Of a DNA stretch of 64,000 nucleotides, positions 8,870-64,000 are shown piece after piece. Source of the DNA: Macrostomum lignano. Lineage: Eukaryota. The notes under the pieces were generated by a model. It did no database searches, had not been told where the DNA came from, and saw only the letters and a program-made list of their open reading frames with translations. The stretch covers positions 351,453 to 415,452 of the forward strand of contig NIVC01000897.1 in NCBI GenBank assembly GCA_002269645.1, given 5' to 3'. Each line of letters begins with the position of its first letter. Position 1 is the stretch's first letter. A program made the position numbers and the translations under genes.

Positions 8870-10240
<1,371 letters not shown>

Positions 10241-11008: not shown

Positions 11009-11337
11009 TGGCGCCCCTTGGTGCTGGCGCCCCTTGGTGCTGGCGCCCCTTGGTGCTGGCGCCCCTTGGTGCTGGCGCCCCTTGGTGCTGGCGCCCCTTG
11101 GTGCTGGCGCCCCTTGGTGCTGGCGCCCCTTGGTGCTGGCGCCCCTTGGTGCTGGCGCCCCTTGGTGCTGGCGCCCCTTGGTGCTGGCGCCCCTTGGTGC
11201 TGGCGCCCCTTGGTGCTGGCGCCCCTTGGTGCTGGCGCCCCTTGGTGCTGGCGCCCCTTGGTGCTGGCGCCCCTTGGTGCTGGCGCCCCTTGGTGCTGGC
11301 GCCCCTTGGTGCTGGCGCCCCTTGGTGCTGGCGACCC
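11009..11337. repeat. Minisatellite, 16-bp unit GGCGCCCCTTGGTGCT
   Basis: About 20 near-perfect copies. Confidence 0.97.
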
Positions 11338-13279: not shown

Positions 13280-13891
<612 letters not shown>

Positions 13892-16450: not shown

Positions 16451-16463
16451 TTTATGTCCGCCT

Positions 16464-31490: not shown

Positions 31491-46373
<14,883 letters not shown>

Positions 46374-46425
46374 GTGAGATGCGCTGCGGTATCTGGCCGC
46401 AAACTGAGCTGAGAGTTAAAACAGA

Positions 46426-47188
46426 AGTAGAAGGCATGAGGGGGCTTCTGGGACAAAATTTTTCACCTCCTCCATAATCCACCTAAATCCATCCATATTA
46501 TCCCTGACAGAATCAGAAAAAAAGGGGGGTCGCACCTGCTAACAAAACGTCTTCCATAATCCACCTAAATCCTTCCATATTATCCCTGACAGAATAAGAA
46601 AAAAAGGGGGGTCGCACCCGCTCACAAAACGTCCTCCATAATCCCATTAAATCTATCTATATTATCCCCGACAGAATCTTGAAAAAGGGGAGGGGTTGCA
46701 CTTGATCCGAAAACTTTAATCCCATTAAATCCATCCATATTATGACTGACAGAATATGGGAATATGGGTCCACTAACACCTGTTATGTTCACTGACACTG
46801 ACATAATCCACTAACATCTTCGAAACAATAAGAAAATAATCTGAATTCTTCTCCCCACATTCAATTTGCAACGTGCTACCAGATCCCTAAGACTTTAAAT
46901 CATCAGCGCAGGGTCCTTACCCTTTGAAAAAAATTAAATTTTCAATAAAAATGTTTCCAGTTGTCTCTCCAGGTTCTTATTATACTCAGCCTAATCCATT
47001 GTACAAATCCAAGTACCAATGCAAACTTGAATGCAGCGAATACATGAGAAAATATTGGCCCAACGTTGATATCAATGTCCCTAATATTAATCTAGCTCTC
47101 CAAAGACTTTGGTTTCATAAGTATGGAGTAACCTATGTAAAAGATTACGACAGCTACTATAACTTTGCAGAAATCATTAGGCAATTGT
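46426..47188 (+). repeat. Left terminal inverted repeat (~760 bp) with ~82-bp subterminal tandem units
   Basis: 46454-47188 is the reverse complement of 63297-64000, with scattered indels. The unit CCATAATCCACCTAAATCC...CTGACAGAAT...GGGGTCGCACC repeats 3-4 times. Confidence 0.93.
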
Positions 47189-47190
47189 AG
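46951..47190 (+). CDS. 79-aa Tyr-rich orphan ORF inside the left TIR
   Basis: AAAAATG start as in other element genes. A counterpart with indels lies in the right TIR (63529-63295, minus). Confidence 0.5.
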   Translation: MFPVVSPGSYYTQPNPLYKSKYQCKLECSEYMRKYWPNVDINVPNINLALQRLWFHKYGVTYVKDYDSYYNFAEIIRQL

Positions 47191-47540
47191 AATGTCGTTA
47201 CAATACGCTTTAAGACTTTAAGACTGCATTAATAGATATTTTTACGCATGGTATTTTGCTGTGTGGCGGGTTGGTGATAGCGGAATGGGTATGGCAGCTG
47301 TCTTGTCATAGCGCGAGCGGCGTGTGCAGCATAGAGAAAAAAGCTTTTGCCCAGCTCAAGCCTTAACTAGCTCAGAAGATCCCTTGCCTAGCTTCAGAAA
47401 CGCCCATTTAGTTCCTTGTTTAAACCCCCAGCCTTCTCAACCCCCAGCTCTTTCAGCAGTCTTCCTAGATCTTTTCCAGGCAACCCCAATCAACCATTAA
47501 TAGAAAATACTGGCTATAAGTAGAAAATCTGCGGGTTTCC

Positions 47541-47621
47541 CTTCTAGAATTCGAATTCTAGAAAATTCTAGAACAAAAAGAGAATCCGTGGATTCCCGAG
47601 CCCACACCAATGGTATATATA
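47541..47621 (+). promoter_or_regulatory. Heat-shock element, CCAAT and TATA upstream of ORF 47739
   Basis: aTTCt-aGAAa-aTTCt-aGAAc (47555-47574) is four perfect alternating nGAAn pentamers, with cTTCt-aGAAt at 47541-47550. CCAAT at 47607. TATATATA at 47614. Confidence 0.7.
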
Positions 47622-47738
47622 CAGCCGATTCACACCGCCCCTCGCCTCACCCTGCCTGCTCCGCCTCGCCTCGCCCCGCCTCAACTCGCTGAGCCAGCAA
47701 CTTCTTATTTTTGACTAGCTTAATCTCTGTATCTTGCC

Positions 47739-48362
47739 ATGGATGAAGAAATGCAAGCAGGCAACAACGTTTACATCCAAAATCTGGAGAACTTCATCAA
47801 GGCGGTTTTTTCTAGTAAAGATCTCGACAACTGGAATCTTTGGGCCGATAAATACAATGCAATTGCTCGGTCACCAATCGTGAAGCCAACTATCAATGGA
47901 CGGCTAGCGAAAACTACCGACAAGCAATTACAAATCGGCAAGGCTCTGGACGAGTTGCGCACGGCCTATAAAACCAACAGTGAGCCTGTGCCAGTGCATT
48001 CTCTAGAAGAATTTATGCAGGGAACATTTACGATCGACGCAGTGCTTGTACAGATTGCCAACCTTCATAAGCTAGTTGAACGGTATGGCAAGCATGGCTT
48101 TGCAAACGGCCTACAGCTCGGCAGGATCTTTCTGAGAATGGAGCGGGTTCTCAGTAAGGAACAGTTCAACGAGCTGAAAAGACGTGCACCGTTCACCAGC
48201 CAGTGGACCAACTTTCTGATGAAATTGGCTGACCAAGCTGAGAAATATCCGGTGCTACAAAGATCTGCAATGTCCCTGCACAAGCTGAAGTCGATGATTG
48301 CATACTTGCCAGAGGCCCTTGCGATGCTGCAACAGGAAGTGGACGAAGGCTTGTTGTTTTGA
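47739..48362 (+). CDS. 207-aa orphan helical protein, possibly DNA-binding
   Basis: Intact ORF with GCCATGG context. The C-terminal half (GLQLGRIFLRMERVLSKEQF...FTSQWTNFLMKLA) loosely resembles DUF3102-like helical domains by eye. Confidence 0.75.
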   Translation: MDEEMQAGNNVYIQNLENFIKAVFSSKDLDNWNLWADKYNAIARSPIVKPTINGRLAKTTDKQLQIGKALDELRTAYKTNSEPVPVHSLEEFMQGTFTIDAVLVQIANLHKLVERYGKHGFANGLQLGRIFLRMERVLSKEQFNELKRRAPFTSQWTNFLMKLADQAEKYPVLQRSAMSLHKLKSMIAYLPEALAMLQQEVDEGLLF

Positions 48363-48457
48363 CTTTTAAATTAGCAATGTATTGTTTATTTAGCAACTCA
48401 TGAAGCTATAATAATAGCAAGTTATCCTTGGATAGTTTTTTATTACTAATATTGACA

Positions 48458-49767
48458 CCAACCTCAAATTTTGAAACCACTGGTTTCATTTTCTGGGGTG
48501 GTTGTTTAACAAGTATGCCATTTTGATTGCCCACCTCAAATTTTGAAACCACTGGTTGCAAATTTTGAAATTTGCTTGGGACAGTGTAGAAAAATGTTTC
48601 TGCTGGAAGCAGTGCAGAACTCAGATCACCCACCTCAAAATTTGAAACCAACGGTTTCATTTTCTGAGGTGGCTGTTTGACTAGGAGAGCGTAGAAGAAA
48701 ACGGAGGGATCACCCAGAAGGTTGTACTTTGTAGAGTGTAGACGTAAGTTTTAAAAATAAAACCCTTGGGAGAGCGTAGAAGAGATCACCCACCTCAAAA
48801 TTTGAAACCAGTGGTTTCATTTTCTGAGGTGGCTGTTTGACTAAGCTCGGGAGAGCGTAGAAGAAAACGGAGCGGCTAGTTGTGGAGGCTAGAAAAAGAA
48901 AGACCCCCTCCCGCCCGGATCAACCCTCAACCCTCTGCAATTCTCTTTTTTGGCTTTGGCGCTGCACTGCACAGAAGTGAATTGCAGAGGGAGGGTGGGT
49001 GGAGAGAGAAGAGGGGACTTGTGGCGGAATGCGCGGACTGCATGCAGTGAGTGGCAGGGCGGGTGAGAACTGGATAGCGCAGCAGTGTAGACCCACCTCA
49101 AAATTTGAAACCAGCGGTTTCATTTTCTGAGGTGGCTGTTTGACTAAGCTCGGGAGAGCGTAGAGCTAGTTGCGGAGGCTAGAGAAGCAGTGCAGAACTC
49201 AGATCACCCACCTCAAAATTTGAAACCAGTGGTTTCATTTTCTGAGGTGGCGCGGCGCCCCTGTGCAAGAGAGCCCAGTGCTCTGGCCCGGACTGTTGGG
49301 GAAGGGAAAGGGAGAGGAGCTCAAGGGGAAGGAGATTTCAGTACAACGGGAGAGTCAAAATTCCCAGGCGCTTCTCTACCCCCAGCGCGAGATCGCTAGT
49401 GTTATGTTTGACTAAAAATAGAATGAGCTCGGGAGAGCGTAGAGCTAGTTGCGGAGGCTAGAGAAGCAGTGCAGAACTCAGATCACCCACCTCAAAATTT
49501 GAAACCAGCGGTTTCATTTTCTGAGGTGGCTGTTTGACTAGGAGAGCTTAGAGAGAGCTAGTTGCGAAGAGAGGCACCCAGAGGACAGGCTTGGAATGAG
49601 AGGCGGTGGGGCAAGACGGGTGAGAGAAGGGCTGGCCTGAGAGTTGGTCTACCCAGACCCCCCGGCCCTCTCTGGGGGTTGGGAGGCTAGAAAAAGAAAG
49701 ACACAAGCGTCTTTAGAGGATCACCCACCTCAAAATTTGAAACCAGCGGTTTCATTTTCTGAGGTGG
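48458..49767. repeat. Array of 8 copies of a 43-bp imperfect palindrome separated by variable spacers
   Basis: CCACCTCAAAATTTGAAACC-AGY-GGTTTCATTTTCTGAGGTGG at ~48458, 48531 (partial), 48630, 48790, 49093, 49208, 49487, 49725. Confidence 0.92.
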
Positions 49768-49910
49768 CTGTTTGACTAGTTGCGGAGGCTAGAAAAAAAA
49801 GAGACAGGCAGAACTGGGCGGGGTGTTCAGTGTGGTGGGACTGGGGAGAAAAAGCAGGCGCTCACCCAGAAACCTTTTATATTGTTGCATAGTTTAGACC
49901 CTGCACATAC

Positions 49911-50217
49911 GGGGTTGTAGCCTAGTGGTTAGGGCGTCGGACTCACGACTTGTATGAAGGTTGGGGGTTCGATTCCCGATCCCCCTGCAACAATCTGTGT
50001 CTTTGAGCAAGGCACTTTACTCCGCATTGCTTCAGTTCACCCAGCTGTAAAATGGGTACCAGCATTAGCTGGAGTAATTGAGGGTGTGTGTGGCGACCCC
50101 CAGTCCTTGGACTGAACAGCCGCACGCAGCCTTCAGATGCGCCGCGCAATAGCTGCGGCTGAGCTGTCGATTGCACATCTGCCCATTGGGCAGTTGTAAT
50201 CAATTATTATTATTATT
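49911..50217 (+). mobile_element. tRNA-derived CORE-type SINE inserted in the Polinton
   Basis: A box TAGCCTAGTGG and B box GGTTCGATTCC, then GTGTCTTTGAGCAAGGCACTTTACTCC..GCTTCAGTTCACCCAGCTGTAAAATGGG resembling the MIR CORE domain, then a (TTA)n tail. Confidence 0.8.
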
Positions 50218-50544
50218 TACCTACGATAGGCATTCTGTCTTCTGCTGCATGCTCTGTTGTTGCCACGTTGCTTACCACATGAAAAACTATAATAAACTAA
50301 TAAACTATATAGCGACTATAATCTGTCGCTACAGTCCTTCAGTTGTTTATCAATGTAAACTGTTCAGCAGTCTTTCTAATTCTTTATTTGGCGTGCGCAA
50401 TACAAAGGAAAGAAAGGAAAGGAAAGGAAAGCACGCGTGGAACTTGTACATTCGCAAAAGCTGCGCTCCCTCAGCAAATAGCAGTTACCCCACCCCTTGT
50501 CGAAATGCAGCTGTTGCGCTTGGCTGCGAATAATCTTTCCCGAC

Positions 50545-51033
50545 TCAAGCGCCTCTCTCAACCCCCAGCTCTTTCAACAGTCTTCCCAATTCATTGTTTG
50601 GAGCACACAAAATAAACCCCGCTCCCGAGCACTCCGCACACCCGCCCTCTCTCCCCAAACACCCACCTTCGCCTTGAACCCCCAAACCCAACTTTGCCTT
50701 ACTAAAAATAACAGCTTTAACTAGCTTCCGAGCAATCGACTCACGAAATCCGCTTGAAGCCCCTATATTGTCTAGTCTCTTAAGCATTTCTTTGTCCCAG
50801 CGATTCTTCTCCTCAGGAAAATCTCTATATTTAACATCGTGCCACATGCAGACAGAGTCTAGCTCATTCACAGGCTCATGCCCAGGATTTGGGTTGTTGT
50901 TTCCATCCAGCTGTATTTCAAGAGGATTCAAAGGCCCGCAATATTTATAGCCGGGAAGTGTCCAGCCTTTGTTTGGATGAGGAAGCTTTTCTATCAGTCC
51001 ATGTGAATCTATTTTACCACCAGAGCGTTGCAT
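50545..51033 (-). CDS. Parvovirus VP1u-type phospholipase A2 protein (162 aa from ATG 51033)
   Basis: LPGYKYCGPLN Ca2+ loop and PVNELDSVCMWHDVKY catalytic HD motif. Confidence 0.9.
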   Translation of the reverse strand: MQRSGGKIDSHGLIEKLPHPNKGWTLPGYKYCGPLNPLEIQLDGNNNPNPGHEPVNELDSVCMWHDVKYRDFPEEKNRWDKEMLKRLDNIGASSGFRESIARKLVKAVIFSKAKLGLGVQGEGGCLGREGGCAECSGAGFILCAPNNELGRLLKELGVERGA

Positions 51034-51063
51034 TATTTTATTTAAAATTTTCTTTTTAAATAA

Positions 51064-52101
51064 ATGACAGATCAGAAACTTAAAAAACTCTACTACAGCG
51101 ACAAAGGATTCTTTGTAGGCAAAAATGCCGTTAGTAAACTCATGGAGCTGAGTAAAGAGCCAAAAGCTACAGTAGAAAAATGGCTCTCTAAGCAGGCTGT
51201 CTTTCAAGTCTATTTCCCACCAGTAAAATTTGAAAGGCCCCATTTCAGTATTTATAAACCTAATGAAGCGCACCAAGCAGATCTTTTGTTTCTCCCCAAC
51301 GACTCAGGCTACAAGTATGCTCTTACAATTATTGACATTGCTTCCAGATATAAGGAAGCTCGCCCACTCAAGACGAAGAAGTCAGAGGTTGTTGCCAGCG
51401 CACTGCAAGATATTTATAAAAACTCTCCGCTCACATACCCCCAAATCTTTATGACCGACCCGGGTAAGGAATTCATGGGTGTAGTGAAATCCCTTATGGA
51501 AAAGAAAAACACAGAGATTCGCTATGGCAGAACAAACTTGCACAGAGACCAGGCTTTTGTGGAAAGATTCAATCTAACTCTAGCCAAGAGACTATTCACT
51601 AAGCAGACAGCGCAAGAACTCAAACTGAGTGCGGGGCAGTACTATACCAAGTGGACAGAAAGACTCCCCACTGTTATAGAGCAACTGAACAATGAAGTCA
51701 CACGCATGACTGGATTGAAACCATCCCATGCAATTAAACAAGACACTGTCGAACTTAAGGCATCTCATAAAACAGACAACAACACGACAACCCCACACAA
51801 CACACACAACACAAAGCACACCTCGAACTACCCTAAGCTTCCAGGAGTTGAATCACCATACATACTGACAAACTCTGAGTTTCTACGCTTTTTATATCTA
51901 CCTGGAGAGCTAGAGAAAGACACCAAAAGAAGAGCTACAGATCCATACTTCAGCCTTGATGTGCATAAAATAGACAGACATTTTACCTCCGACTCCGGTG
52001 ACTATTACTTTTTATCTCAAGCCTTTAACCCTAAATCCCCCACGCGGTCATTCACTAGAGCTGAACTCCTAGTGATACCAGCTGACACAGAAATTAATTA
52101 A
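51064..52101 (+). CDS. int: Retroviral-like (rve) integrase of the Polinton
   Basis: DDE triad contexts HQADL, MTDPGKEF and VERFN. C-terminal YLPGELE..RRATDP..FTRAELL typical of Maverick integrases. ORF is intact. Confidence 0.95.
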   Translation: MTDQKLKKLYYSDKGFFVGKNAVSKLMELSKEPKATVEKWLSKQAVFQVYFPPVKFERPHFSIYKPNEAHQADLLFLPNDSGYKYALTIIDIASRYKEARPLKTKKSEVVASALQDIYKNSPLTYPQIFMTDPGKEFMGVVKSLMEKKNTEIRYGRTNLHRDQAFVERFNLTLAKRLFTKQTAQELKLSAGQYYTKWTERLPTVIEQLNNEVTRMTGLKPSHAIKQDTVELKASHKTDNNTTTPHNTHNTKHTSNYPKLPGVESPYILTNSEFLRFLYLPGELEKDTKRRATDPYFSLDVHKIDRHFTSDSGDYYFLSQAFNPKSPTRSFTRAELLVIPADTEIN

Positions 52102-52117
52102 AATATTAAAATAAAAA

Positions 52118-52495
52118 ATGACAAAGATTGAAACTAGAACCATCAATAAACTCAATAAAATCATTGAATCAAAGAAACCAGGTATTATATCAATTAAAGG
52201 TGTCAAAGTAAAAATCGATCCCACGCAGCAAATAGTTCAGTGTAATGAACAAAGACACAGCATCACAGATGAAAAGTCAGGAGGAATCCTACCATTAGCA
52301 GCTCTTATTCCGATCATTGCAGGCGCTGTAAGTGCCGCAGGTGGTGTAGCTGGAGGTGTAGCAACTGCTGTTAAAGCTGGGAATGATAGAGCCCACCAGC
52401 TGGAATTGCAAAAGATTGCAAGAGACAAAGGTATAACAATTAAGGCAGGAGAGGGCTGCCCGATCGTGATGATTGTGAGCATGAAAATTCTGTAA
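52118..52495 (+). CDS. Small protein with an adenovirus pX (mu) precursor-like hydrophobic segment
   Basis: GGILPLAALIPIIAGAVSAAGGVAGGVA resembles adenovirus pX GGILPLLIPLIAAAIGAVPGIASVA. Confidence 0.75.
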   Translation: MTKIETRTINKLNKIIESKKPGIISIKGVKVKIDPTQQIVQCNEQRHSITDEKSGGILPLAALIPIIAGAVSAAGGVAGGVATAVKAGNDRAHQLELQKIARDKGITIKAGEGCPIVMIVSMKIL

Positions 52496-52686
52496 GCAAG
52501 TCTGACATTGTCAAAGCCATCATGACACTGCACAATGCTGGGTTTACAATAATGCGGATGTGATGAGGTTTAAAACCCCACTTTATCCAGCTTCATAAAC
52601 CTAATACTACTTATAGGATGTAGAAACAGTTCAACTTTTCTATCAGGGTGGTCACCCTCAAAATTTTTTTTATATTTTCGAGAAAA

Positions 52687-55600
52687 ATGCCAAAAGCTAA
52701 TCCAGCAAGAGATTTAGTCAACAAATATTTTTCAAAAGGCGTCTCATTTCAAGACAAAAGTAATTCACTAAGAGAAGCATGCAAACAAAAGTTCAACACC
52801 GACCCCGGTCACCTGGGAAGCTATGAAAAACAGTTGGAAATCATCAATCAATTAGAATCAAACCAGTATGCGCCTATAAAAAATTCTGCAAAGGAACACC
52901 AAGAGAGGAGTCGCAACTTAGTTAACAAATATGAAACTCTCACTGGTGAAAAAGCAAAGTACCCACAAAATAAGCAGGAACAAGAGAAATTAGAGCAATT
53001 AATCCATTTAAAAGAGTCGGAGCTTGCCACTGAAGAGATTAATTTTGCACAGACGAAGTTTACAGAACATTACATAGAGTACACAATCCCAATTAACGGC
53101 ACCAACGGTACCACCGCAAATATCTACGACTATAAAGACAGCATCCAATCAGTTGTTGATCACACACTCAAAACACGCAAGACCTTTAAACTACAGATAT
53201 CATTCAAGATTGCGTTTTATATGCCTGCGAAACCCACTGAGCATCTCGAGTATTACATGACAACAAAGGCAAAGCCATTCACCCCAACAGACACACTGGA
53301 TCCTTTCCTTCAAGATGTCAATAAGAAAATTGAAGCGTTTACATCCAGAGGTTCCGGATGGGTCGTGGGAGGGATTCAAAGAGCGACTGTCATGGTCATG
53401 AAATATGACCCACTTAAAGCCTCCTCTTATATAGAGCTCCCGCATAAGCTAGCCGGTAAAAAAGCTTGCATAAATGTTAAAAATAAAGACAATTGCTGTG
53501 CTCTATGGGCAGTTCTTTCTGCACTTTTTAGTGTACCTCACCACCCCGAAAGAACCTCAAATTATCAAAATTATTTCAACTACTATCTCATTGAATGCGA
53601 AAAGAAGGGAATCAGGTTTGACAAAGGAGGCTTGGCGATCTCTCAGATCCCAAAGCTAGAAGAAGTGTTTAATAACAAAATTAGAATCACAGTCTTTGAG
53701 TGGAGTGAAAAAACTGAGAAAGTTCAACCGGTCAGATGTAGCAAAGACGTTTTAGATCCGAGGGGAAAAGGCGGACTGAAGTGGATCTTCTAGTGATTGG
53801 TAATTTACTAGAGGAGGCTCACTATGTTTGGATTAAAGATCTTTCAAGACTCATACACAAGCAGTTGAATAATCATCACGAGGCTGTTGCCATCTGCCGC
53901 TTGTGCCTTAAGCATTACAGTGGACCTGAACGCTTTGAAAAACTAGCAGAGCATGAATTATCATGCGAGGATCACCCGACAAACTGCTCTCTTCCTTCAG
54001 CTGAAGAGAAGTATCTCCGGTTTAAGAACTATCACAAGATGGAGAAGCTCCCATTTGTTGTATATGCTGATTTCGAATGCTCAATCGTGCCAGAAACTCA
54101 AAAACAAACTCCAACTCAAAAACAAACTCCAACTCAAAAACAAACTCAAACTCAAAAACATGTCCCCAATTCAGTAGCATATGCCTTTATTAATACAAAA
54201 GGACTTGTTGAGTATAATTATTTCTTTGGAGAGCAGTGTGTGGAGCAGTTTATTGCCAGAATGTTAGAGTTGCAAAAATGATTAGCACCCTTCAACCTGT
54301 TCCAATAATGATGACTGAGGAGGATGAAAGCAATTTCCTATCAGCAACTCATTGCCACATCTGCAGGAAACATTTAACTTGCACTAATATTAAAAACCCC
54401 ACCGTTAGGGACCACTGCCACTATACTGGGAAATTTAGAGGTGCAGCGCATAACACCTGTAATCTAAAGCTAAAATCGAACATTCATGATCTAACGATAT
54501 TTTGTCACAACGCAAAGAACTATGACATGCATTTAATAGTTGAAAAAATCGGCATGATTCCAGACATACACCTTGATTGCATCGCAGAGAACAAGGAGAA
54601 GTTTAAGTGTGTTGATATTAAACAGGATAATTCGGGTAAAGGTAAAATAAGACTGAAGGATTCATATCAATTTCTAGCTGCCAGTCTAGACGAACTAAGC
54701 AAGAATCTAAAAGATGAACAATGTACATATACAAAGATGTTTGCAAGTAAAATTAACAACACTGATGAATCATTTAAACTCCTGAGAACCAAAGGCTTCT
54801 ACCCCTATGAAAATATTACTGGGTATCACGTATTTGAAGAAGGTTTACCACCACAAGAAAGTTCTTTTCAAAGCTAACAGACTCTGGAATCTCTGACAAA
54901 GACTATGAGCACGCGAAGCATGTCTATAATTACTTTAATTGTCAAAACTTCTTCCAGTATCACCTGCTTTACCTCTACACAGATGTGTTTCTGCTGGCCG
55001 ATGTGTTTGAAACCTTCAGATCACCTGGTACACAGCATATGGCCTCGATCCAGCACATTATGTGTCTCTGCCTGCCACTAGCTGGGAATCTTTGCTTAAA
55101 ATGAAATGGGATCAAGATCCAGATTGGTACATTGAACTTCTTACAGACATTGACATGTACAATTTTGTCGAATCGTCAAAGCGAGGGGGAATCTCAATTT
55201 GCACATAGATATGCAAAAGCAAACAATCCCTACATTGAATCTTACAATAAGGAGCAGCCCTCAAACTACATTACTTACTTGGACGCTAATAATCTCTACG
55301 GGTGGGCGATGAGTCAAGATCTTCCAGTTAGAGATTTTCGATGGTACCCTCATCAGAATTCAAACGGGACTTTTCATTGGCTGCCATTTATGAGGTTGAT
55401 GTTTACATTCCACCAGAGCTTCACGACTATTTCTCTGACTTTCCACCCTTCCCAGAGAACATCAAGTGCCCGAAAATAATCGAAACTCCCAATGATAATA
55501 ATGGAACTTGGCACCTGTCAGGAACAGAAAAAGAACATACAGAGAAACTAACACAGAATCTAAACAACAAGACACGTTACAAAATCCATTACAAACTGCT

Positions 55601-56559
55601 TCAGTATTTTATCTCACTTGGTTGCAGGGTCACCAAGTTCACCGGGCTCTTACATTTACAGAGGAAGCGTGGATGAAACCCTACATTGATAAGAACACCC
55701 AGTTTAGGACCAAAGCAACCAACGACTTTGACAAGAACCTCTTTAAGTTGGCCAACAACTCTGTCTATGGCAAGACTCTTGAGAATGAGCGGAAAAGAAC
55801 AAACCTGAAACTTGTTACCTCATCAGAGCCTGATGTTATTCAGGCAAATATGTCAAAGCCAACATTCAAAGAACTCCATATCTTTAATAGCTACTTAGGT
55901 GTGATCATATTTTACAAAACCAAGGTGACGCTGCGCAAGCCGATCTATACAGGTGTCACTGTTCTCGACGAATCAAAACGTCTGATGTACCAGTTCTTCT
56001 ATGGCATGAAGCAGCAGTACAAGGATAAAATGAAACTCTTGTACACTGACACAGACAGTTTTATTATGGACATTCAAACAGAAGACATTTATCAGGACAT
56101 GCTGCAGCAAAAAGATTTGTTTGACTTGTCTGAGTATGATGAATCTTTCAGGACACAGAATGGCGATCAAGTGTTTGACGCCACTAACAAGAAAGTGATT
56201 GGGAAAATGAAGGACGAGATTGCTGGTGACATAATCACTGAATTCATTGGGTTGAGAGCAAAGTCCTATTTTATAAAATGTGAGTCGTCAGACCCAATCA
56301 AAAAATCAAAGGGAATTCCGAAACGTGTGTTAGGAAGGAAATTAATGAAGCTGAATACAGAGACGCCTTGAATTGCAACAAAAAGACATCACATGAGTTC
56401 TCAAAGCTACAATCTAAAAACCATATTATTCACACAATTCAGCAAAAGAAGATTGGACTGTCAGGTGCAGATAACAAGAGATTCATTTTTGATGACAATA
56501 TCAACAGTCTACCGTTCGGGCATTGGAGGTTAGGTTTAGGAGGTGGATATTGGGTTTAG
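52687..56559 (+). CDS. pPolB: Protein-primed family B DNA polymerase, broken by several frameshifts
   Basis: GSGW/SYIELP N-terminal region, ExoI YADFE, endonuclease VII-like RDHCHYTGKFRGAAHNTCN, ExoII HNAKNYD, ExoIII YLYTDV..LADVFE, motif A YLDANNLYGWAM, motif B KLANNSVYGKT, motif C LYTDTDS, C-terminal DNKRFI..LPFGH. Confidence 0.95.
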
Positions 56560-56592
56560 GTTTGAGAGAAAGTTTAATAAACCTCATAAAAA

Positions 56593-56993
56593 ATGACAAC
56601 AAATAACTTTCTTGAAGATTTGGCTAACGAACTGGAAATCCCAAACTTTAGAGGAATATTTATGAGGGACACTCTGCCTGATTTTCCTCTAAGAAAAGAA
56701 TGCGGCATCATGAACTTTGACACCACCGATAAGCCAGGATCTCATTGGGTTTGCTGGGTGATTGATCCCATCGCAAGCACAAGTGTTATTACTTCGATAG
56801 CTATGGGACGGCAGTACCAGAAGAGCTAAGAAATTATATGAAGGGAAAAAATAATAAAAAAATTTATCGCTCAGACTTTATTCTCCAAGGTCTTAGCAGT
56901 GATATTTGCGGTGAGCTGTGCATGACTGTTTTGTATGCAATGACCAAAACACGAAAGACCTACAAGGAAATTATTCTTGGCTGTGTTTCATAG
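56593..56993 (+). CDS. Adenain-like cysteine protease (one frameshift at ~56780)
   Basis: GSHWVCW (His), then in the shifted frame YYFDSYG (Asp) and LQGLSSDICGELC (Gln/Cys). Confidence 0.9.
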
Positions 56994-56996
56994 GGT

Positions 56997-57664
56997 TCAT
57001 TGTGCATTCTCGTCGTCCTTCTTGCCGAATTTCTTGCCGAATTTCGCCGACTTTCTTTCCGCATAATGTTGAAGAACTTTCTCGAGTTCATTTCTCAGCT
57101 GACTCATGTCATCAGTACCGACCATGTTCAAGTTCATTCGAATTGATTGTTCATAAAGATCCTGAATGGTTTTGAACTCATCCTCTGAAATGAACTTATC
57201 GTCGATTGCCTTGAAATGTACCCTATGATTGAAGTGTGCACCCCTTTCTCTTTTACTTGCTTCTCCTGTAGCTGCTTTAGTTTTTTTCGCCTGTTTCGCG
57301 CTAATGCTCCAGTAATTGCTGAAATAAGTCCACATGCAGCACCCACAGAGCCGAGCGGGATTGCGATTGGGGCTGTGATGACTGGCAACACTGAGACAGC
57401 TGCAGCAGATCCAGATAGAACAGACACAGATCCTAGAATCATATTGCTGTAGTCGAAAAATTTACAGTGGTTGTCATAGCGCTTAATTTTCTTTGTGTTG
57501 TGGAAAATATTTTTTTCAAGATCATCGCGCATTTTTTGAATCTCCACTAGTCGAAACTGTTGAGAGTTACAAGTAATGACGGGGTAGAGTTTTTGTTGCT
57601 CATATTGGGGTGCACTAGGTGCTGTGGGAGCATTCGGATCATAAAGAGAATTTTGAGCATCCAT
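56997..57664 (-). CDS. Polinton uncharacterised protein with PTAP/PSAP motifs and a hydrophobic hairpin (frameshifted near 57230)
   Basis: APTAPSAP..LYP..FRL.EI..LE N-terminus, two hydrophobic stretches, basic RNRRKK, and a tail AIDDKFISEDEF in a second frame. Resembles a common Maverick family by eye. Confidence 0.7.
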
Positions 57665-57771
57665 TTTTTAGGGAATTTTTTAAAAAAATCGGCAACTAGT
57701 TGGTGGTGGCTAGATTTGTTTTACGGTTGATTGCTTCGTCTGCAGTGACGGCAACAGGTCTCTGAATCTGC

Positions 57772-58514
57772 CTATTCATTATCTGTGAGCTCCATTCTAC
57801 GCATGATCTCAAACAAGTCGGTTGGATCACTTGTTTCCCTTGTGGTCTGTGGTGCCTCTTCAGCGTCAATGTTTTTGAGATTATGCAAGCGTTCAAGACG
57901 ACCGATTCTTCTCACCGATTTCTGCCATTCGGTAAAAACTAAATCTACAAAGACTTTAATTGCAGTAATTCTTACTTTGATTCGATCATGCAACGCTGTT
58001 GACTGAGTCATGAACTCTTCTAAATTCCTCACTTTACCTGTGTTGGTTGCGACGTTTTCTTTAATTCTATCATGCAACGCTGTTGACTGGTTCATGAACT
58101 CTTCTAAATTATTCACTTTAGCTGTGTTTGTGAAAACTCCTCCTTCAAGAATACGCATCCGTCTATCAGTGGAATTTCCAGAAGATTAACTGTCGATCTT
58201 AAGCTGTTGATTTGCGAGACTGCCGAAGTTATTTCTGACCTAAGTTCATTAGTTGCGTTTAACAACGGCACATAAAGCTTATCACTTTCAAACTTCTGCC
58301 TAGCTACTTTAAGCCTGAGATCTTCCATGTTTATTTGCAACTGGTGCATGGAGCGCTCTAGGGCTTTCAGTCTGTTTTTATTCAGTTTGATCTCTGGGAT
58401 CTTTTCGTCGCTGTTGATATATCGCCTGTCAAGGATGGATATCTGAGCTGATGTAAGAGCGCTGTTGCCAGAAATGGATTCACCTGCAAAATTATAGACA
58501 TCTTTTATTAGCAA
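57772..58514 (-). CDS. Coiled-coil protein(s), probably one frameshifted gene, with an internal ~29-aa duplication
   Basis: Overlapping ORFs 58113-58514 and 57772-58158. NLEEFMxQSTALHDRIK occurs twice. Confidence 0.55.
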
Positions 58515-58517
58515 ATT

Positions 58518-59313
58518 TTAAATTACAGTTCTTTTTTCTTGTTGATCATGACAAACTGATAGGGTGTTCCACTTGTCATAGCAAAGATTAACGAATTCCT
58601 CTTGTGAAATCTTTCTGCTTGAGTTTTTTGTTGGATTTATAAAATAGGCAGGCGCAATGACCTCATTGTAAAATCTTTTTAGCCTATCCTGTGGAATGGT
58701 TGGAAACAGGAGAATCAGATTGCAGTTCCCACGAATTGTTTTGTTCGGGAGCTCGAACCAGTTCTGTGCAATGTAAATTACATTACAATTGTTATGTCGC
58801 CCTCTTGTAAAATAGTTTTCTATCTGCTTCTGTGGGCCTGTCATACAATCATCAAAGACGATCAAATGCTTTCTCCCTTTTCTAGCTCATCTGGTTGGGG
58901 TAGAAGTTTGGTCTTTGGATCAGCCTGTGGATCTCCATAGGTGAACACTTTAATGTTCTGCCATTTTTCATTGTCTTTGAGGTGCTTTGCATATTCAGCA
59001 GCTACAATTTCTGGGTTACTGGGAAGGCACATTTGGTTATTAAAACATTGAATAATGTCCTCTTTGTTCAGTTTGTTTTGCAATCCAGAAATCAGCATTT
59101 TATACTCATCTTGATACAGTGTGGGAGAGTAGATGTGCAGAGTGTCATAGTCGATAAAGCCAGGTCTAAGAAGCATGTTAAAGACTCTGAATGTTTTACC
59201 TGAACCTGATGAACCAACAACAATGCATCTGAAGTGACTCGGGATTGACTCGTGATGAGAAAACTTAATCTGATTACGCGTCCAGTGAGGATTGAAGTCG
59301 TTTGAAAGTCCAT
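58518..59313 (-). CDS. A32/FtsK-like DNA packaging ATPase (frameshifted)
   Basis: Walker A CIVVGSSGSGKT (read in the alternative frame at ~59200-59240), Walker B IVFDD, and RGRHNNCNVIYIAQ. Confidence 0.93.
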
Positions 59314-59521
59314 TTTTTCTATGATTGAAAAAAAATTAAATAATAAATCATTTAGAAGATGTGTCATTTCGGGACTTGAATGTGTCGTTTTGGGACTTAG
59401 ATGTGTCATTTTGGGACTTAGATGTGTCATTTCAGGACTAGTCTTATACTCTTACATGTCTTGTACCCTTGAAAGTACCTTTAGTCAAATTTGAAACCAC
59501 TTCCTTTTTTAATGCTAGCTC

Positions 59522-59842
59522 TCATCTTCTCATAGACTGCAGGGTCCACACTGTCTGGATTTGGGGCCAGCGGGCCAGCGGGGCCAGTGGAGGTTGAATC
59601 TCTTGTTTAGGTGTTACAGTATCCTTTATCTTTTTGGCTGCTGTGGCTACACTGCCAGCCGCTTCGGCAACGTTCTTGATGTTCTCTTTGTTCTCTCCAA
59701 TGACCTTAAAAATCTTAGCCCCCTGAGCGATCAAATCGGCAAGGCCATTCCCGAGCGTCTTTTCTTGGATAGTGGCCTGCAGGGAAAAGTCCAGATCCGC
59801 GTTTAATAAGATTAAGTTCCTCTTTGTCATAGTATTTGTCAA
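59522..59842 (-). CDS. Small protein with a predicted amphipathic helix
   Basis: GNGLADLIAQGAKIFKVIG..AEAAGSVATAAKKIK. Sits in the virion gene block. Confidence 0.55.
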   Translation of the reverse strand: MTNTMTKRNLILLNADLDFSLQATIQEKTLGNGLADLIAQGAKIFKVIGENKENIKNVAEAAGSVATAAKKIKDTVTPKQEIQPPLAPLARWPQIQTVWTLQSMRR

Positions 59843-59884
59843 TGTCTTTTTCGAAAATAATTGGCATCTTTTTTAAATAGATAT

Positions 59885-61094
59885 TTATTTTTTGTTGAAC
59901 CGCGAAAGCAGAAGCTCTCTCGCCCTCTTATCGATGTATTTTCTCTCAAGCATTTTATTGAGGATGTTGACAAATTCTTTTCTATTTTCATCTTTCATTC
60001 CGGTCTTTGCCGCTCCTAGAAGAACCGCTACTCGCTTGTAGATTTCAGAAATTCCTTTTCCAGTTGAGGGCGGTTGGTCTTGGGGTTGTGGAGTTGGTTG
60101 GGCTTGTAGCTGCTGGGGAGGTGATGCAAAAGACTGCTCACTTTCAGAGACGGAACTGTCATGTGGTGCCTGTCTTTGTTGAGGTGTGAAAACTCTTTGC
60201 TTGATTCTGTTCATTCGATCTGGAGAGTGTTGTTCTAAGTGTTGCCAGTCTGTTGGGTTTTGTTTCTTATATTCAGCTACTTTCAAAGGGTCTAACTGCT
60301 CGAGTTGACTGAGTACTTGTTCTTCTGTGAAATGTTGCTGCTGTTGTGGCGGTCGTTGTTGTTGTGGTTGCTGTTGCTGTTGTTCTAGATATTTCATCTG
60401 ATCAATGACTTCCCCTGATCTGGCAAACCAAACCATTGTTTAAAGTGCTTGTACTTTTTGAATTTAGTCAGGTTGACACCGTTATCATACATAAGTCTCA
60501 GGACTTCTGGGGCCTTTAGTATTTCTATATCTCTAGCAAGAGCAAAAGTCACTAGATCTCTGTAGTTCTTTAGCTGCTTGTCCGAGATTCTCTCTTGGTT
60601 CTTGGTCATAAAAGTCAGTAAGGCGTCTGTGAAAGGAATTTTTCATAGTTCTAGCCTTTGACAACAGAAATATTTTCTTATTTATGTCGATATAATATTC
60701 CACTGGTTCATTATAAATGTTTTTCTCCACATACTTATTCCAAATACATATTTCCCATCATGTTCGACACGCTCTACTGGTCCAAAAATGTTATCTGTCA
60801 CTTTTAGTTGTGATTGATGTGGTTGTGGTTGTTGTGGTTGCGGCTGTATCTGTGGTGCTTCTGGAATTTTGCCCAAAACCTTTTGCACTTGGGTTTCCTG
60901 TATGTCGTCGATAGTTTCTTTGACCTGATCAATATTTTTCTTAGCTTCTCCATACCCGGCTTATGAAACTCTGTGGCTGCTTGGACAAACTCATTGTAGG
61001 ATTGTTGCTCCTTATTTATTAGCCCGGTAACTCGTTTCTCTGCTTGTGCTAGCTTCTCCAATTCAGATATCTGCTGTGTACTTTTTCGCTTCAT
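59885..61094 (-). CDS. Conserved uncharacterised Polinton protein (PZ-like, tentative), split by frameshifts, with Gln/Pro-rich inserts
   Basis: Fragments FHKPGMEKL, DNIFGP..DGKYVFG, DKQLKNYRDLV and TGKG..KRVAVLLGAAKTG..EFVNILNKM follow the order seen in a widespread Maverick protein (recognised by eye). Confidence 0.55.
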
Positions 61095-61124
61095 TTCTTA
61101 TTTTATTTTATTTTTAGTTAAAAA

Positions 61125-62406
61125 ATGAACGACCCACTGACACCAGTTTTCTACAAAATTAACAAGCCTATTTTGAGTGATGATAGCACAATCAAAGCGA
61201 CTCAGGTAAGAGTTCCAGTCAGGAAAATCAGAATGAAACTAATCTTGGTCCTGGTCAAACACTGACATTTACATACAATGGATGTTCGTCTTTGGTTAGT
61301 GTGCACAGTCTTAAGAGCGGCTTCCATATGACATTTCAATTCAAGACAAAGGTGGTGCGGATGCGGCTCGTGCTAACGTTGACAAGCATGATGCGGATGT
61401 GGCTCTGATCAGTAACTTTTGGGCGTACATGTTCAAGGAGTTTAGTGTATCGAATGGGAGCACTGAGTTGGAGCGAATCGCCAACTTTGGAATTGTCTAT
61501 GACGCTCATTGTTTGATCGAGAATCCTGATTTTATTCAGTTGGGAAGTGGTGCGGGTTTATTGCAGATGAAAAAGAAGGAGATATCAATGACAGTGGCTA
61601 TAAAAAGAGGAAGAAGAGATACAACTATGCATTGCAAGGTGCTGATGATGCTGCTAAAAACCCGCTGTATCGGTCTGTTGATGTATTTGTACCACTGAGA
61701 TTCATGAGTGGATTCTGTAATACATTTAATCGACTGACTAGTAACTTTAGCTACACCTTTAGGATGACTAGAGATGATCGCAGTAGAGTGTTGTGGACTG
61801 GGGCGGACCACACAAGGATGGAGGTGAAGCTAACCGGAATCGAGCTGTATTTGGAAGTCATTGAGCAAAGACTGCACTAAAAGCAGATTATCTTAAGGCA
61901 ATAGAGAAGGACATTGATGTTGCATACACGGCCTACATGTGTCGAGATGAGCGAAACGAAACTAGAACAAACATCTGCATTAAAGAGGGATCATGCAGCA
62001 ATCCAAGGTATATCATTATTAATATGAGAAACCCAAATAGCATTATACGCTACATGCATGGAGACGTGCGGTCCATTCAGCATGAAATCAGTGATAATCT
62101 TTACCCTGCACTGCCACAAAATGGAGATTTCAGTCAGAACAAGATTAGCAAATTTATAGCGAGTTGGTCGACTTGGCTGTGAAAGAGAACAATGGAATTG
62201 CTATCACTGCTCTTCAATATGGAACTCTATATCCGATGTTTGGCGCTGATGTGTCTGCCAGACAAATGCCTACTGATAACAGCCCTGTGAATATCGTGAC
62301 TAACATTGAGAGGACTGTCGCAACACCCGTGGACCTGTACATTATCTATGCATTTGAGAGGAAGGTGAAGCTTAACATGATCAACAATTCATCCAGTAAA
62401 GTTTAA
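61125..62406 (+). CDS. Double jelly-roll major capsid protein (PY/hexon-like), multiple frameshifts
   Basis: ~1.28 kb. Motifs VFVPLRFMSGF..TFRMTRDD, VKLTGIELYL, NPRYIII and LYPMFGADVSARQ match Polinton MCP patterns. Lies directly upstream of the penton gene. Confidence 0.75.
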
Positions 62407-62429
62407 ATATTTTTTTGTGGGTGAAAAAA

Positions 62430-63290
62430 ATGGAAGCTATAGCCGAAAGACTAAACAATATTATTTCGCACTCCAAGGAGAGCATTCCTATTACAATAAC
62501 TGGGCGATTAATGACTCAAACGGGATATTTGTTCAAAAATTAGAGCAGGCGATTAGCCTGGATCCAGGTGCTAATTACCATGTCTATCTTAACGACTTCA
62601 CTGGTTGGTCAAACGTTCCCAATGTGACGGCAGCAAATAATAAGTTTTATTACAAATGGAAAGGTGCAGCAGCAGAACCTGTGGTATTCCCTGTGAGCAC
62701 GCAAAGTGTGGATACCTACAATTACTTTCTAGAAAACGTCTTTACTAAAAGAGGCCATTTTGAGACACCTGATATGAGTAAGCCAGAGAAGAAACTGTTC
62801 CCTGTTAAACTAACCTATGATCTCACTGTAATGAGAGTGGTCATGCAAGTTCACAAAGATGCGGAGGTTGAGTTTAAAGATGACACTTGGTATAGGGAAT
62901 TGGGATTCGTGAAGAAAGTTTATAAGCAGAATCCACAGCGCGGACTGTCACTCAAGCATCGGGGCCGTTAGCATGGCCCGGGAAAGTGTACGCGGTTTGT
63001 TCTTAGCACCCAATATAGCAGACATTGTAAAGGGTTTGAATATTCTAATCAGAACTAATCTCAGTCTTGATTGGGTATTTAAGGGAAAGCGAACTAATAT
63101 TTTGTACAACATCTCCAACTCTGTAGCTGGAGGACAGATGGTGGTAGAGAAACCAAATCCAGTGAAAAGAGTTGTATTGAGTAATAAGGAGATTCACGAG
63201 ATTGTGCTTCAGTTTGAGACTGAAGATGGGATGGGCGTTGATTTTAATGGGGAAGAGTTTGTATTGACGTTAATCATTGAGAGAATGTGA
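62430..63290 (+). CDS. Single jelly-roll minor capsid protein (penton/PX), frameshifted
   Basis: ISLDP..YHVYL..WSNVPNVTAANNKFYY, ELGF and EKPNPV..IHEIVLQFETEDG..VDFNGEEF..L are typical Polinton penton motifs. Confidence 0.82.
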
Positions 63291-63296
63291 GAAATC

Positions 63297-64000
63297 ACAA
63301 TTGCCTAATGATTTCTGCAAAGTTATATAGCTGTCGTAATCTTTTACTAGGTTACTCCATACTTATGAAACCATGTCTTTGGAGAGCTAGATTAATATTA
63401 GGGACATTGATATCAACGTCGGGCCAATATTTTCTCATGTATTCGCTGCATTCAAGTTTGCATGGTACTTACTCTTGTAATGGATTAGGCCTGCGTATAA
63501 TAAGAACCTGGAGAGACAACTGGAAACATTTTATTGAGAATTTATTATTTTTTTTCAAAGGGTAAGGACCCTGCGCTGATGATTTAAAGTCTTAGGGATC
63601 TGGTAGCACGTTGCAATTGAATGTGGGGAGAAGAATTCAGATTATTTTCTTGATTGTTCGAAGATGTTATGGATTATGTCAGTGTCAGTGAACATAACAG
63701 GTGTTGTGACCCATATTCCATATTCTGTCAGTCATAATATGGATGGATTTAATGGATTAAAGTTTTCGGATCAAGTGCCTCCCCTTTCAAGATTCTGTCG
63801 GGATAATATAGATGATTTAATGGGATTATGGAGGACGTTTTGTGAGCGGGTGCGACCCCCTTTTTTTCTATTCTGTCAGGGATAATATGGAGGATTTAGG
63901 TGGATTATGGAAGACGTTTTAGCAGTGCGACCCCTTTTTTCTGATTCTGTCAGGATAATATGGATGGATTTATGGATTATGGAGGAGGTGAAAAATTTTG
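63297..64000 (-). repeat. Right terminal inverted repeat (truncated by the window end)
   Basis: Reverse complement of 46454-47188. The window ends ~28 bp short of the expected terminus. Confidence 0.93.

What the first reader, a model, noticed from the sequence alone, without database searches (positions are those of the whole stretch)
46374..64000. Complete adintovirus-like Polinton with a full virion module sitting in an intron of a ciliary gene
Seen: the TOG4-coding exon ends at a GT donor (46374), and ~50 bp later the TIR begins. The rest of TOG4 is absent from the window. The element encodes PolB, integrase, protease, ATPase, MCP, penton, PLA2 and a pX-like gene. Inference: a ~17.6-kb provirus enlarges an intron of a gene expected to matter for cilia. 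Plus-strand viral poly(A) signals or the HSE promoter could truncate or modulate TOGARAM1 transcripts.
Basis: partly seen in the sequence, partly recalled or inferred. Interest (0 to 1): 0.72.

Follow-up and report, generated by a model that had tools for sequence, protein, structure and literature searches.

The report
Polinton provirus at a flatworm contig end
The window really ends in a ~17.6-kb adintovirus-like Polinton integrated just after an exon of the TOGARAM1-like gene of the flatworm Macrostomum lignano. Most of its genes read as broken, probably because of sequencing errors near the contig end, and the contig stops inside the element, so "sits in an intron" cannot be checked here.

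Summary
The window is the last 64 kb of Macrostomum lignano contig NIVC01000897.1 (assembly Mlig_3_7), and base 64000 is the contig end. From about 46.4 kb to that end lies a Polinton/adintovirus-like element with ~735-nt inverted terminal repeats. The right repeat is cut by the contig end. All eight claimed genes were found: protein-primed PolB, rve integrase, adenain-like protease, A32/FtsK-type ATPase, double-jelly-roll capsid protein, penton, PLA2 and a pX-like gene.

As the sequence stands, only the integrase, PLA2 and one unknown ORF are open. The other genes carry at least 20 frame changes and one stop. Eighteen of the 20 frame changes have the sign of a single lost base. The two terminal repeats differ by 10 substitutions but 32 indels, and 28 of those are bases missing in the contig-end arm. 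The assembly is PacBio/Canu polished only with Pilon. The breaks are therefore most likely consensus errors, not decay.

The host gene is TOGARAM1-like. Its annotated model reads through the proposed GT donor to a stop 36 nt downstream. Downstream TOG4 exons, the right terminus and the target-site duplication lie outside the contig. Verdict: an ordinary new member of a known kind, and the intron claim is untested.

The parts
45822..46374 (+). Last visible exon of the host TOGARAM1-like gene (PAA75203.1, BOX15_Mlig002093g11). Its last ~45 residues look like the first HEAT repeat of a fourth TOG domain. It is followed by AAG|GTGAGA, and the annotated CDS reads on to the stop at 46410-46412.
   Evidence: tblastn of the 1433-aa annotated protein gives exons from 31491 to 46409. 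PDB 5dn7 (FAM179B TOG2) matches the first exon at E 3e-15. Sequence read.
46454..47188 (.). Left terminal inverted repeat (the demonstrable part). The true terminus lies between 46375 and 46454. It contains about 3.7 copies of an 82-nt subrepeat (46465-46770).
47739..48362 (+). Open 207-aa ORF of unknown function, all-helical. An HSE-like palindrome lies upstream at 47556-47573.
   Evidence: The single-sequence model has pLDDT 48 and is uninformative.
48450..49800 (.). G+C-richer non-coding block with 8 irregularly spaced copies of a ~43-nt imperfect palindrome.
49905..50215 (+). tRNA-derived SINE-like insert with an A/T-rich tail.
   Evidence: Rfam tRNA match at 28.4 bits (gathering score 29) at 49911-49984. 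Sequence.
50545..51033 (-). Parvovirus-type phospholipase A2 gene. It is open and colinear with relatives to its C-terminus.
   Evidence: Pfam PF08398, E 2e-13. 60-67% identical to relatives in L002 and L003 in one piece.
51064..52101 (+). rve (retrovirus-type) integrase, open, 345 aa.
   Evidence: Pfam PF00665. 603 relatives, best 69% identical and full length. One piece against P0001 and P0002.
52115..52560 (+). Adenovirus pX-like small protein gene, interrupted by 1 frame change.
   Evidence: Pfam PF05829, E 3e-7. Compared with the 127-aa relative in L002.
52624..56556 (+). Protein-primed family B DNA polymerase gene with an Endonuclease_7-like zinc-finger insert, interrupted by at least 8 frame changes.
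   Evidence: tblastn to the intact 1248-aa PolB of L005, E 4e-75. Weak PF03175 hit and a PF02945 hit. Counts.
56590..56990 (+). Adenain-like cysteine protease gene, interrupted by 1 frame change.
   Evidence: 558 relatives. Intact relatives P0152 and P0169 pass the Pfam Peptidase_C5 cut-off. Counts.
57000..57667 (-). Small membrane-protein gene conserved in related elements, interrupted by 1 frame change.
   Evidence: tblastn to the L005 207-aa protein, E 9e-7. Counts.
57775..58517 (-). Coiled-coil protein region (two ORFs) containing an 84-nt duplication. It is partly similar to a 218-aa protein of relative L004.
58521..59451 (-). A32/FtsK-type packaging ATPase gene (Walker A and B motifs visible), interrupted by at least 1 frame change.
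   Evidence: Pfam Pox_A32, E 0.002, below the cut-off. Matches the A32 proteins of L001 and L005 at E 5e-5.
59525..60439 (-). Two ORFs of unknown function (116 aa, and a Gln-rich 184 aa).
   Evidence: no family match
60403..61067 (-). Homologue of a gene that lies divergent from the capsid gene in relative L004. The relative's protein has no cysteine, so it is not the protease. Interrupted by 1 frame change and 1 stop.
61125..62403 (+). Double-jelly-roll major capsid protein gene, interrupted by 5 frame changes.
   Evidence: 68-71% identical to the 422-aa protein of L004, which passes Pfam PF21738 DJR-like_dom at 29.3 bits.
62430..63287 (+). Penton (single-jelly-roll vertex protein) gene, interrupted by 2 frame changes.
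   Evidence: 61-63% identical to 273-280-aa relatives. The AlphaFold model of P0121 matches mavirus penton 6g41 (E 3e-9), adenovirus penton base and adomavirus LO5.
63297..64000 (.). Right terminal inverted repeat, cut by the end of the contig. At least ~28 nt are missing if the terminus is at 46426.

Best explanation
WHAT IT IS. This is an integrated adintovirus-like Polinton/Maverick, a virus-like DNA element of the Orthopolintovirales kind, in Macrostomum lignano.

HOW SUCH ELEMENTS WORK (established knowledge of the family, not tested here). They replicate with a protein-primed PolB, integrate with an rve integrase, and can build a capsid. The capsid uses a double-jelly-roll major protein and a penton, is packaged by an A32/FtsK ATPase and is matured by an adenain-like protease. 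PLA2 and pX-like proteins serve as membrane-active or core accessories.

WHERE IT SITS. Shown: the copy lies directly downstream of an exon of the TOGARAM1-like gene, at most 80 nt after a consensus donor site. It is about 17.6 kb long as assembled and runs to the end of contig NIVC01000897.1. Inferred: the assembler stopped there because the element is longer than most reads and is repeated in the genome.

THE BREAKS. Shown: the sequence as it stands has at least 20 frame changes and 1 stop, in nine genes. Inferred, about 75% likely: most of these are uncorrected single-base deletions of the PacBio/Canu consensus near the contig end. On that reading the real copy is young (terminal repeats about 1.4% apart by substitutions, or less) and may have open genes.

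EFFECT ON THE HOST GENE. Inferred, about 55% likely: the insertion lies in the intron that splits the fourth TOG domain, and the remaining exons are on another contig. Otherwise this gene copy, one of up to three subgenomic paralogues, is truncated at the insertion.
For: IDENTITY AND GENE SET
- Genes and relatives.
- Terminal repeats.

HOST AND POSITION
- Host species and contig position.

BREAKS AS ASSEMBLY ERRORS
- The repeat arms differ by 10 substitutions but 32 gap events. 28 of the 32 are bases missing in the contig-end arm (binomial p 2e-5). In the outer third the split is 12 to 0.
- 18 of 20 frame steps in the genes have the sign of one lost base (p 4e-4), with only one in-frame stop.
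- The open genes (ORF207, PLA2, integrase) are the ones farthest from the contig end.
- The two LTRs of a retrotransposon in the contig interior differ by one substitution and no indel.
- The assembly is Canu 1.4 on PacBio CLR reads, polished only with Pilon (PMC5730564). Short-read polishing is unreliable in repeats.

INTRON READING
- The exon ends in AAG|GTGAGA, after only about 45 residues of a TOG-like HEAT repeat.
Against: - No independent reads of this locus could be examined, so the error explanation is indirect.
- One-base deletions are also the commonest natural indel.
- There is one in-frame stop and there are 10 substitutions between the arms.
- A SINE-like insert and a repeat array inside the element suggest some residence time, or that they are family features.
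- The public transcript-based gene model does not use the proposed donor. It reads through to a stop 36 nt later, which fits truncation as well as an unspliced precursor.
- The right flank, the target-site duplication and the rest of TOG4 are not in the contig.
Confidence: 0.7

Rival explanations
1. The copy is a genuinely decayed endogenous fossil. The frame changes are real mutations accumulated after integration, and only the integrase, PLA2 and one ORF happen to remain open.
For: Nine genes are interrupted. There is one in-frame stop. The element holds a nested SINE-like insert and a repeat array. Starrett et al. report that degraded adintovirus sequences are common in animal germlines (PMC8502044).
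Against: The indel-to-substitution ratio between the repeat arms is 32 to 10. The indels are 28 to 4 in favour of the contig-end arm. 18 of 20 frame steps have the same sign. The breaks are confined to the genes nearer the contig end. LTRs in the contig interior carry no indels. The assembly method is known to leave such errors.
Confidence: 0.2
2. The element does not interrupt an intron but ends this gene copy. The insertion, or a rearrangement at it, truncated one subgenomic paralogue of the TOGARAM1-like gene inside TOG4, and transcripts terminate at the read-through stop or in the left repeat.
For: The transcript-evidence-based annotation ends the CDS by read-through at 46410-46412. M. lignano carries three subgenomes, so a truncated copy could be tolerated (PMC10733133). 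No downstream exon is visible.
Against: The exon ends at a strong consensus donor in the middle of a HEAT repeat. The annotation pipeline discarded transcripts that overlap repeats and could not join exons across contigs. The contig end explains why no downstream exons are seen.
Confidence: 0.35
3. The junction between the host exon and the element is an assembly chimera, and the element is not at this locus.
For: 36% of the assembly length is reported to lie in scaffolds that are chimeric between subgenomes (PMC10733133). The element is at a contig end and is repeated.
Against: The junction lies 17.6 kb inside a Canu contig, within reach of single long reads that start in unique host sequence. 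The reported chimerism is between homologous subgenomes, not between random loci. The sequence shows no break signature at 46375-46454.
Confidence: 0.08

Closest known systems
Adintoviruses (proposed Adintoviridae; Starrett et al. 2021, PMC8502044), especially those with Mayetiola-class (Alpha) virion modules
   Same: It has the same core set: PolB, rve integrase, adenain, FtsK/A32 ATPase, a hexon-like double-jelly-roll protein and a penton. It also has inverted terminal repeats, parvovirus-type PLA2 and adenovirus pX-like accessories, an animal host, and integration into the germline genome.
   Different: PLA2 and the pX-like domain are two separate genes on opposite strands, not the fused 'PLA2X'. 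The PolB barely touches pfam03175 (24.4 bits, cut-off 25.8), and its intact relative does not match it at all, so the Alpha/Beta class is unclear. The capsid protein is short (about 422 aa). The closest proteins in public data are only 58-71% identical. A flatworm host is not among those listed in that paper.
Polinton/Maverick transposons (Repbase groups; Orthopolintovirales)
   Same: Size of 15-20 kb, long terminal inverted repeats, pPolB plus rve integrase plus protease plus ATPase, and a capsid module.
   Different: The 6-bp target-site duplication that defines their integration could not be seen. This copy carries a SINE-like insert and a hairpin-repeat block.
Orthopolintovirales-related insertions in Rhabditophora flatworms (preprint 10.1101/2025.04.19.649669)
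   Same: Same host class and same viral order, found as embedded regions in genome assemblies.
   Different: That survey is at the level of regions and taxa. No gene-by-gene anatomy or host-gene context for this locus is given in the text I could read.
Mavirus virophage (penton structure 6g41)
   Same: It is the best structural match of the penton. It also has an rve integrase, a pPolB, an adenain-like protease and an FtsK ATPase.
   Different: It has a protist host, depends on a giant virus, and shares only 12-14% sequence identity in the penton.

Membership tests
Polinton/Maverick - adintovirus-like elements | Protein-primed family B DNA polymerase | tested here: met
   tblastn to an intact 1248-aa PolB of related element L005, E 4e-75 with 79-82% of it covered. 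Pfam DNA_pol_B_2 gives 24.4 bits, just under the cut-off. The gene is interrupted as assembled.
Polinton/Maverick - adintovirus-like elements | Retrovirus-type (rve) integrase | tested here: met
   Pfam PF00665, 34.8 bits, above the cut-off. It is an open 345-aa ORF, full length against 603 relatives.
Polinton/Maverick - adintovirus-like elements | Adenain-like cysteine protease | tested here: met
   The window fragment finds 558 relatives. Intact relatives P0152 (24.2 bits) and P0169 (21.9 bits) pass the Peptidase_C5 cut-off of 21.3. The window fragments alone give no Pfam or PDB hit.
Polinton/Maverick - adintovirus-like elements | A32/FtsK-HerA packaging ATPase | tested here: inconclusive
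   Pox_A32 scores 18.1 bits, below the 22.8 cut-off. It matches the Pfam-annotated A32 proteins of L001 and L005 at E 5e-5. Walker A and B motifs are seen in the translation.
Polinton/Maverick - adintovirus-like elements | Double-jelly-roll major capsid protein | tested here: met
   68-71% identical over 100% of a 422-aa relative that passes Pfam DJR-like_dom (29.3 bits, cut-off 27). No structure was modelled because the window copy is interrupted.
Polinton/Maverick - adintovirus-like elements | Single-jelly-roll penton protein | tested here: met
   AlphaFold model of the 63%-identical relative P0121 (pLDDT 67.7). Top Foldseek hits are the mavirus penton (E 3e-9), adenovirus penton base, MELD-virus penton and adomavirus LO5. 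TM-scores are only about 0.35.
Polinton/Maverick - adintovirus-like elements | Long terminal inverted repeats | tested here: met
   The arms are about 735 and 704 nt and 93% alike including gaps, or 98.6% alike by substitutions. The right arm is cut by the contig end.
Polinton/Maverick - adintovirus-like elements | 6-bp target-site duplication | not testable with these tools
   The right terminus lies beyond the end of contig NIVC01000897.1.
Adintoviruses (Starrett et al. 2021) | OTU-like domain at the N-terminus of PolB | tested here: inconclusive
   No Pfam OTU hit at E up to 10. A Cys-containing motif reminiscent of OTU is visible. The region is interrupted, so it could not be modelled as one chain.
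Adintoviruses, Alpha virion module | Fused PLA2-pX gene ('PLA2X') | tested here: not met
   PLA2 (50545-51033, minus strand) and the pX-like gene (52115-52560, plus strand) are separate genes, here and in relatives L002 and L003.
TOGARAM1 / Crescerin (FAM179B) | Array of four TOG domains (two N-terminal, two C-terminal) | tested here: inconclusive
   The TOG2 region matches PDB 5dn7 (FAM179B) at E 3e-15. The third TOG gives weak CLASP_N and CEP104-TOG hits. Of a fourth TOG only about 45 residues are present. Orthology was not tested by phylogeny, and ciliary function was not tested.

The most novel reading that the evidence does not exclude
Behind the assembly errors is a young, coding-intact adintovirus-like element of a lineage so far unsampled (58-71% identical to the nearest public proteins). 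It would be present in several near-identical copies in the laboratory flatworm Macrostomum lignano, polymorphic between its three subgenomes, and here splitting or truncating one copy of a cilium-associated TOG-array gene.
Probability: 0.3. Interest if true: 0.5.

Novelty: new member of a known kind. Interest (0 to 1): 0.3.

Why it matters
Polintons and adintoviruses inside or beside host genes are common, so the biology is not surprising.

Two things matter in practice. First, the locus gives a gene-by-gene description of such an element in a model flatworm, a host group for which this virus order has only just been reported. Second, it is a clear warning. Judged by ORFs alone the element looks like a fossil. 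The pattern of the breaks points to unpolished long-read consensus at a contig end, so 'degraded versus intact' calls for endogenous viruses in this assembly are unsafe without read-level checks.

Tried and rejected
SEARCHES THAT GAVE NOTHING
- Pfam found nothing for the capsid, penton and protease fragments of the window. These genes were identified through intact relatives.
- IMG/VR holds no relative of the penton or the integrase.
- The JGI metagenome scan gave only relatives at 50% identity or less, mostly short or themselves fragmented.
- Locus L005 does not include its own terminal repeats.
- PDB sequence searches with the PolB C-terminal piece and a protease piece found nothing.
- PHROGs gave nothing useful for the unknown ORFs.

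CANDIDATES REJECTED
- The gene divergent from the capsid gene was considered as the protease. It was rejected because its intact relative has no cysteine and no protease match.

WEAK OR UNINFORMATIVE RESULTS
- The homologue search with the TOG3 exon was swamped by low-complexity words. It returned one identical fragment, which nevertheless led to the host identification.
- The single-sequence model of the 207-aa ORF had pLDDT 48 and was not used for a fold search.
- My first break-counting script counted a spurious second piece for the integrase. It was corrected.

Full report
WHERE THE WINDOW COMES FROM

A fragment identical to the host exon led to GenBank protein PAA75203.1. [quoted passage not shown] Its gene lies on contig NIVC01000897.1 of assembly GCA_002269645.1 (Mlig_3_7).

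The fetched locus is base-for-base identical to window 21491-56412. That places the window at contig positions 351453-415452, and the contig is 415452 nt long. Base 64000 of the window is therefore the end of the contig.

THE HOST GENE

tblastn of the 1433-aa protein lays out ten exon blocks from 31491 to 46409.
- The first exon matches the solved TOG2 domain of mouse FAM179B, which is TOGARAM1/Crescerin-1 (PDB 5dn7, E 3e-15).
- The exon at 44399-45139 gives weak CLASP_N and CEP104-TOG hits.
- The last block ends with about 45 residues that have the look of the first HEAT repeat of another TOG domain, followed by AAG|GTGAGA at 46374/46375.

The public model does not splice there. It reads through for 12 codons to the stop at 46410-46412.

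That annotation was built from RNA evidence (StringTie, de novo transcripts, poly(A)-site data). Transcripts overlapping repeats were removed, and it has no means of joining exons across contigs (PMC5730564). Read-through is therefore compatible with an unspliced precursor, with real truncation, or with a model cut short by the contig.

M. lignano carries three subgenomes that are 1.4-2.4% apart (PMC10733133), so up to three paralogous copies of this gene should exist.

THE ELEMENT

An inverted repeat joins 46454-47188 to 64000-63297. The last base of the contig pairs with 46454, so the true left terminus lies somewhere in 46375-46454. The guess of 46426 and the predicted 6-bp duplication cannot be tested. 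Both arms contain 82-nt subrepeats.

Between the arms, from left to right, are:
- An open 207-aa helical ORF of unknown function (47739-48362).
- A G+C-richer block with eight copies of a ~43-nt imperfect palindrome (48450-49800).
- A tRNA-derived SINE-like insert (49905-50215; Rfam tRNA at 28.4 bits).
- PLA2 on the minus strand (Pfam E 2e-13).
- The rve integrase.
- A pX-like gene (for these three).
- PolB.
- An adenain-like protease.
- On the minus strand: a small membrane protein, a coiled-coil region, the A32-type ATPase, two unknown ORFs, and a gene that is conserved next to the capsid gene.
- On the plus strand: the double-jelly-roll capsid gene and the penton gene.

The protease was not found by Pfam in the window. 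A full HMMER scan with one of its fragments found 558 relatives, and intact ones pass the Peptidase_C5 cut-off.

The capsid and penton genes were identified through a 3.7-kb metagenomic contig (L004) with the same gene order. Its 422-aa protein passes Pfam DJR-like_dom. Its 280-aa neighbour belongs to a family whose AlphaFold model (pLDDT 67.7) best matches the mavirus penton, adenovirus penton bases, a MELD-virus penton and adomavirus LO5.

The nearest public proteins are only 58-71% identical, and the integrase itself is not in the 5.8-billion-protein collection.

STATE OF THE GENES AS THE SEQUENCE STANDS

I compared stop-free pieces with intact relatives and counted only how many pieces are needed.

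| Gene | Frame changes | In-frame stops |
|---|---|---|
| Integrase | 0 | 0 |
| PLA2 | 0 | 0 |
| pX-like gene | 1 | 0 |
| PolB | at least 8 | 0 |
| Protease | 1 | 0 |
| Membrane protein | 1 | 0 |
| ATPase | at least 1 | 0 |
| Gene next to the capsid gene | 1 | 1 |
| Capsid protein | 5 | 0 |
| Penton | 2 | 0 |

The 207-aa ORF is also open. Taken at face value, 'complete, with a full virion module' fails.

WHY THE BREAKS ARE PROBABLY NOT BIOLOGICAL

Four observations point the same way.
1. The two repeat arms, which should have been identical at integration, differ by only 10 substitutions (1.4%) but by 32 gap events. 28 of these are bases missing in the arm at the contig end (p 2e-5). In the outermost third the split is 12 to 0.
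2. 18 of the 20 frame steps in the genes have the sign expected after loss of a single base (p 4e-4), and there is just one in-frame stop.
3. The open genes are those farthest from the contig end, and every recognisable gene nearer to it is interrupted.
4. In the contig interior, the two 173-nt LTRs of a Ty3/gypsy element differ by one substitution and no indel.

Mlig_3_7 was assembled with Canu 1.4 from PacBio CLR reads and polished only with Pilon from short reads. It is established knowledge that such consensus is left with single-base deletions where coverage thins at contig ends and where short reads map ambiguously in repeats.

I therefore rate 'assembly error' at about 0.75 and 'real decay' at about 0.2.

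HOW IT MOST LIKELY WORKS

By homology with characterised relatives, and not tested here:
- The integrase inserts the linear genome with its terminal repeats.
- PolB replicates it by protein priming.
- The capsid protein, penton, ATPase and protease form and mature particles.
- PLA2 and the pX-like protein act in entry or as core components (PMC8502044).

The element is longer than most reads of that data set and is presumably multi-copy. That explains why the contig ends inside it.

Its effect on the host gene is open. The two possibilities are an enlarged intron with the remaining TOG4 exons on another contig (about 0.55), or a truncated paralogue (about 0.35).

The 'HSE promoter' is a single TTCTAGAAAATTCTAGAA palindrome about 170 nt upstream of the 207-aa ORF. 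20% of shuffles give as many matches. Plus-strand AATAAA motifs are at the chance level (13 against 11.8).

COMPARISON WITH WHAT IS KNOWN

The element meets the tests for pPolB, rve integrase, adenain, double-jelly-roll capsid protein, penton and terminal repeats. The ATPase and the OTU-like PolB N-terminus are inconclusive. The target-site duplication is untestable.

It differs from published Alpha adintoviruses in having PLA2 and pX as separate genes on opposite strands. Its PolB scarcely matches pfam03175.

Flatworms are not mentioned in the adintovirus paper. A 2026 preprint reports Orthopolintovirales-related insertions in Rhabditophora.

This is a new member of a known kind, in an ordinary genomic situation.

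Noticed in passing
window 16464-21070: Young Ty3/gypsy LTR retrotransposon. Its 173-nt LTRs (16464-16636 and 20898-21070) are 99.4% identical with no indels. Its gag-pol is read in two frames (ORFs of 694 and 840 aa). It is inserted inside a minisatellite whose two halves flank it.
   Followed up: partly
window 48450-49800: Eight irregularly spaced copies of a ~43-nt imperfect palindrome (CCACCTCAAAATTTGAAACC...GGTTTCATTTTCTGAGGTGG) in a G+C-richer, non-coding block inside the Polinton. They occur nowhere else in the window. No Rfam match. Origin unknown: it could be native to the element or a nested insertion.
   Followed up: partly
window 49905-50215: tRNA-derived SINE-like sequence with a tRNA-like head at 49911-49984 (28.4 bits, just under Rfam's gathering score), a conserved core and an A/T-rich tail, nested in the Polinton. 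No second copy in the window.
   Followed up: partly
window 47431-47465 and 50551-50586: A 36-nt direct repeat (94% identical) brackets the block made of the 207-aa ORF, the hairpin array and the SINE. The repeated sequence encodes the conserved C-terminal motif of the PLA2 gene. This could be a trace of a duplication or of cargo acquisition.
   Followed up: partly
window PolB gene 52624-56556; L005 10962-14708: Both this PolB and the intact PolB of a distant relative carry a stretch that passes Pfam Endonuclease_7 (PF02945, 24.5-24.9 bits, cut-off 23.6), a zinc-finger/HNH-like insert ahead of the exonuclease domain.
   Followed up: no
window 9872-10228 (-) and 24424-27048 (+): Neighbouring host genes: a forkhead-domain exon (Pfam E 1e-30) and a MAP65/PRC1-like gene (annotated as 527 aa) directly upstream of the TOGARAM1-like gene.
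   Followed up: no
window 3558-4235, 6475-7029, 10872-11444, 13280-16536, 33468-33998, 44000-44110, 45108-45903: Very dense mini- and microsatellite arrays, several of them inside introns of the TOGARAM1-like gene (25-nt and 22-nt units at 45108-45903). This fits the reported repeat richness of this genome.
   Followed up: no
window 46375-46412: The public gene model PAA75203.1 ends with 12 codons read from what looks like intron sequence (…FVVK|VRCAAVSGRKLS*). It is either a real read-through isoform or an annotation artefact of the contig end.
   Followed up: partly
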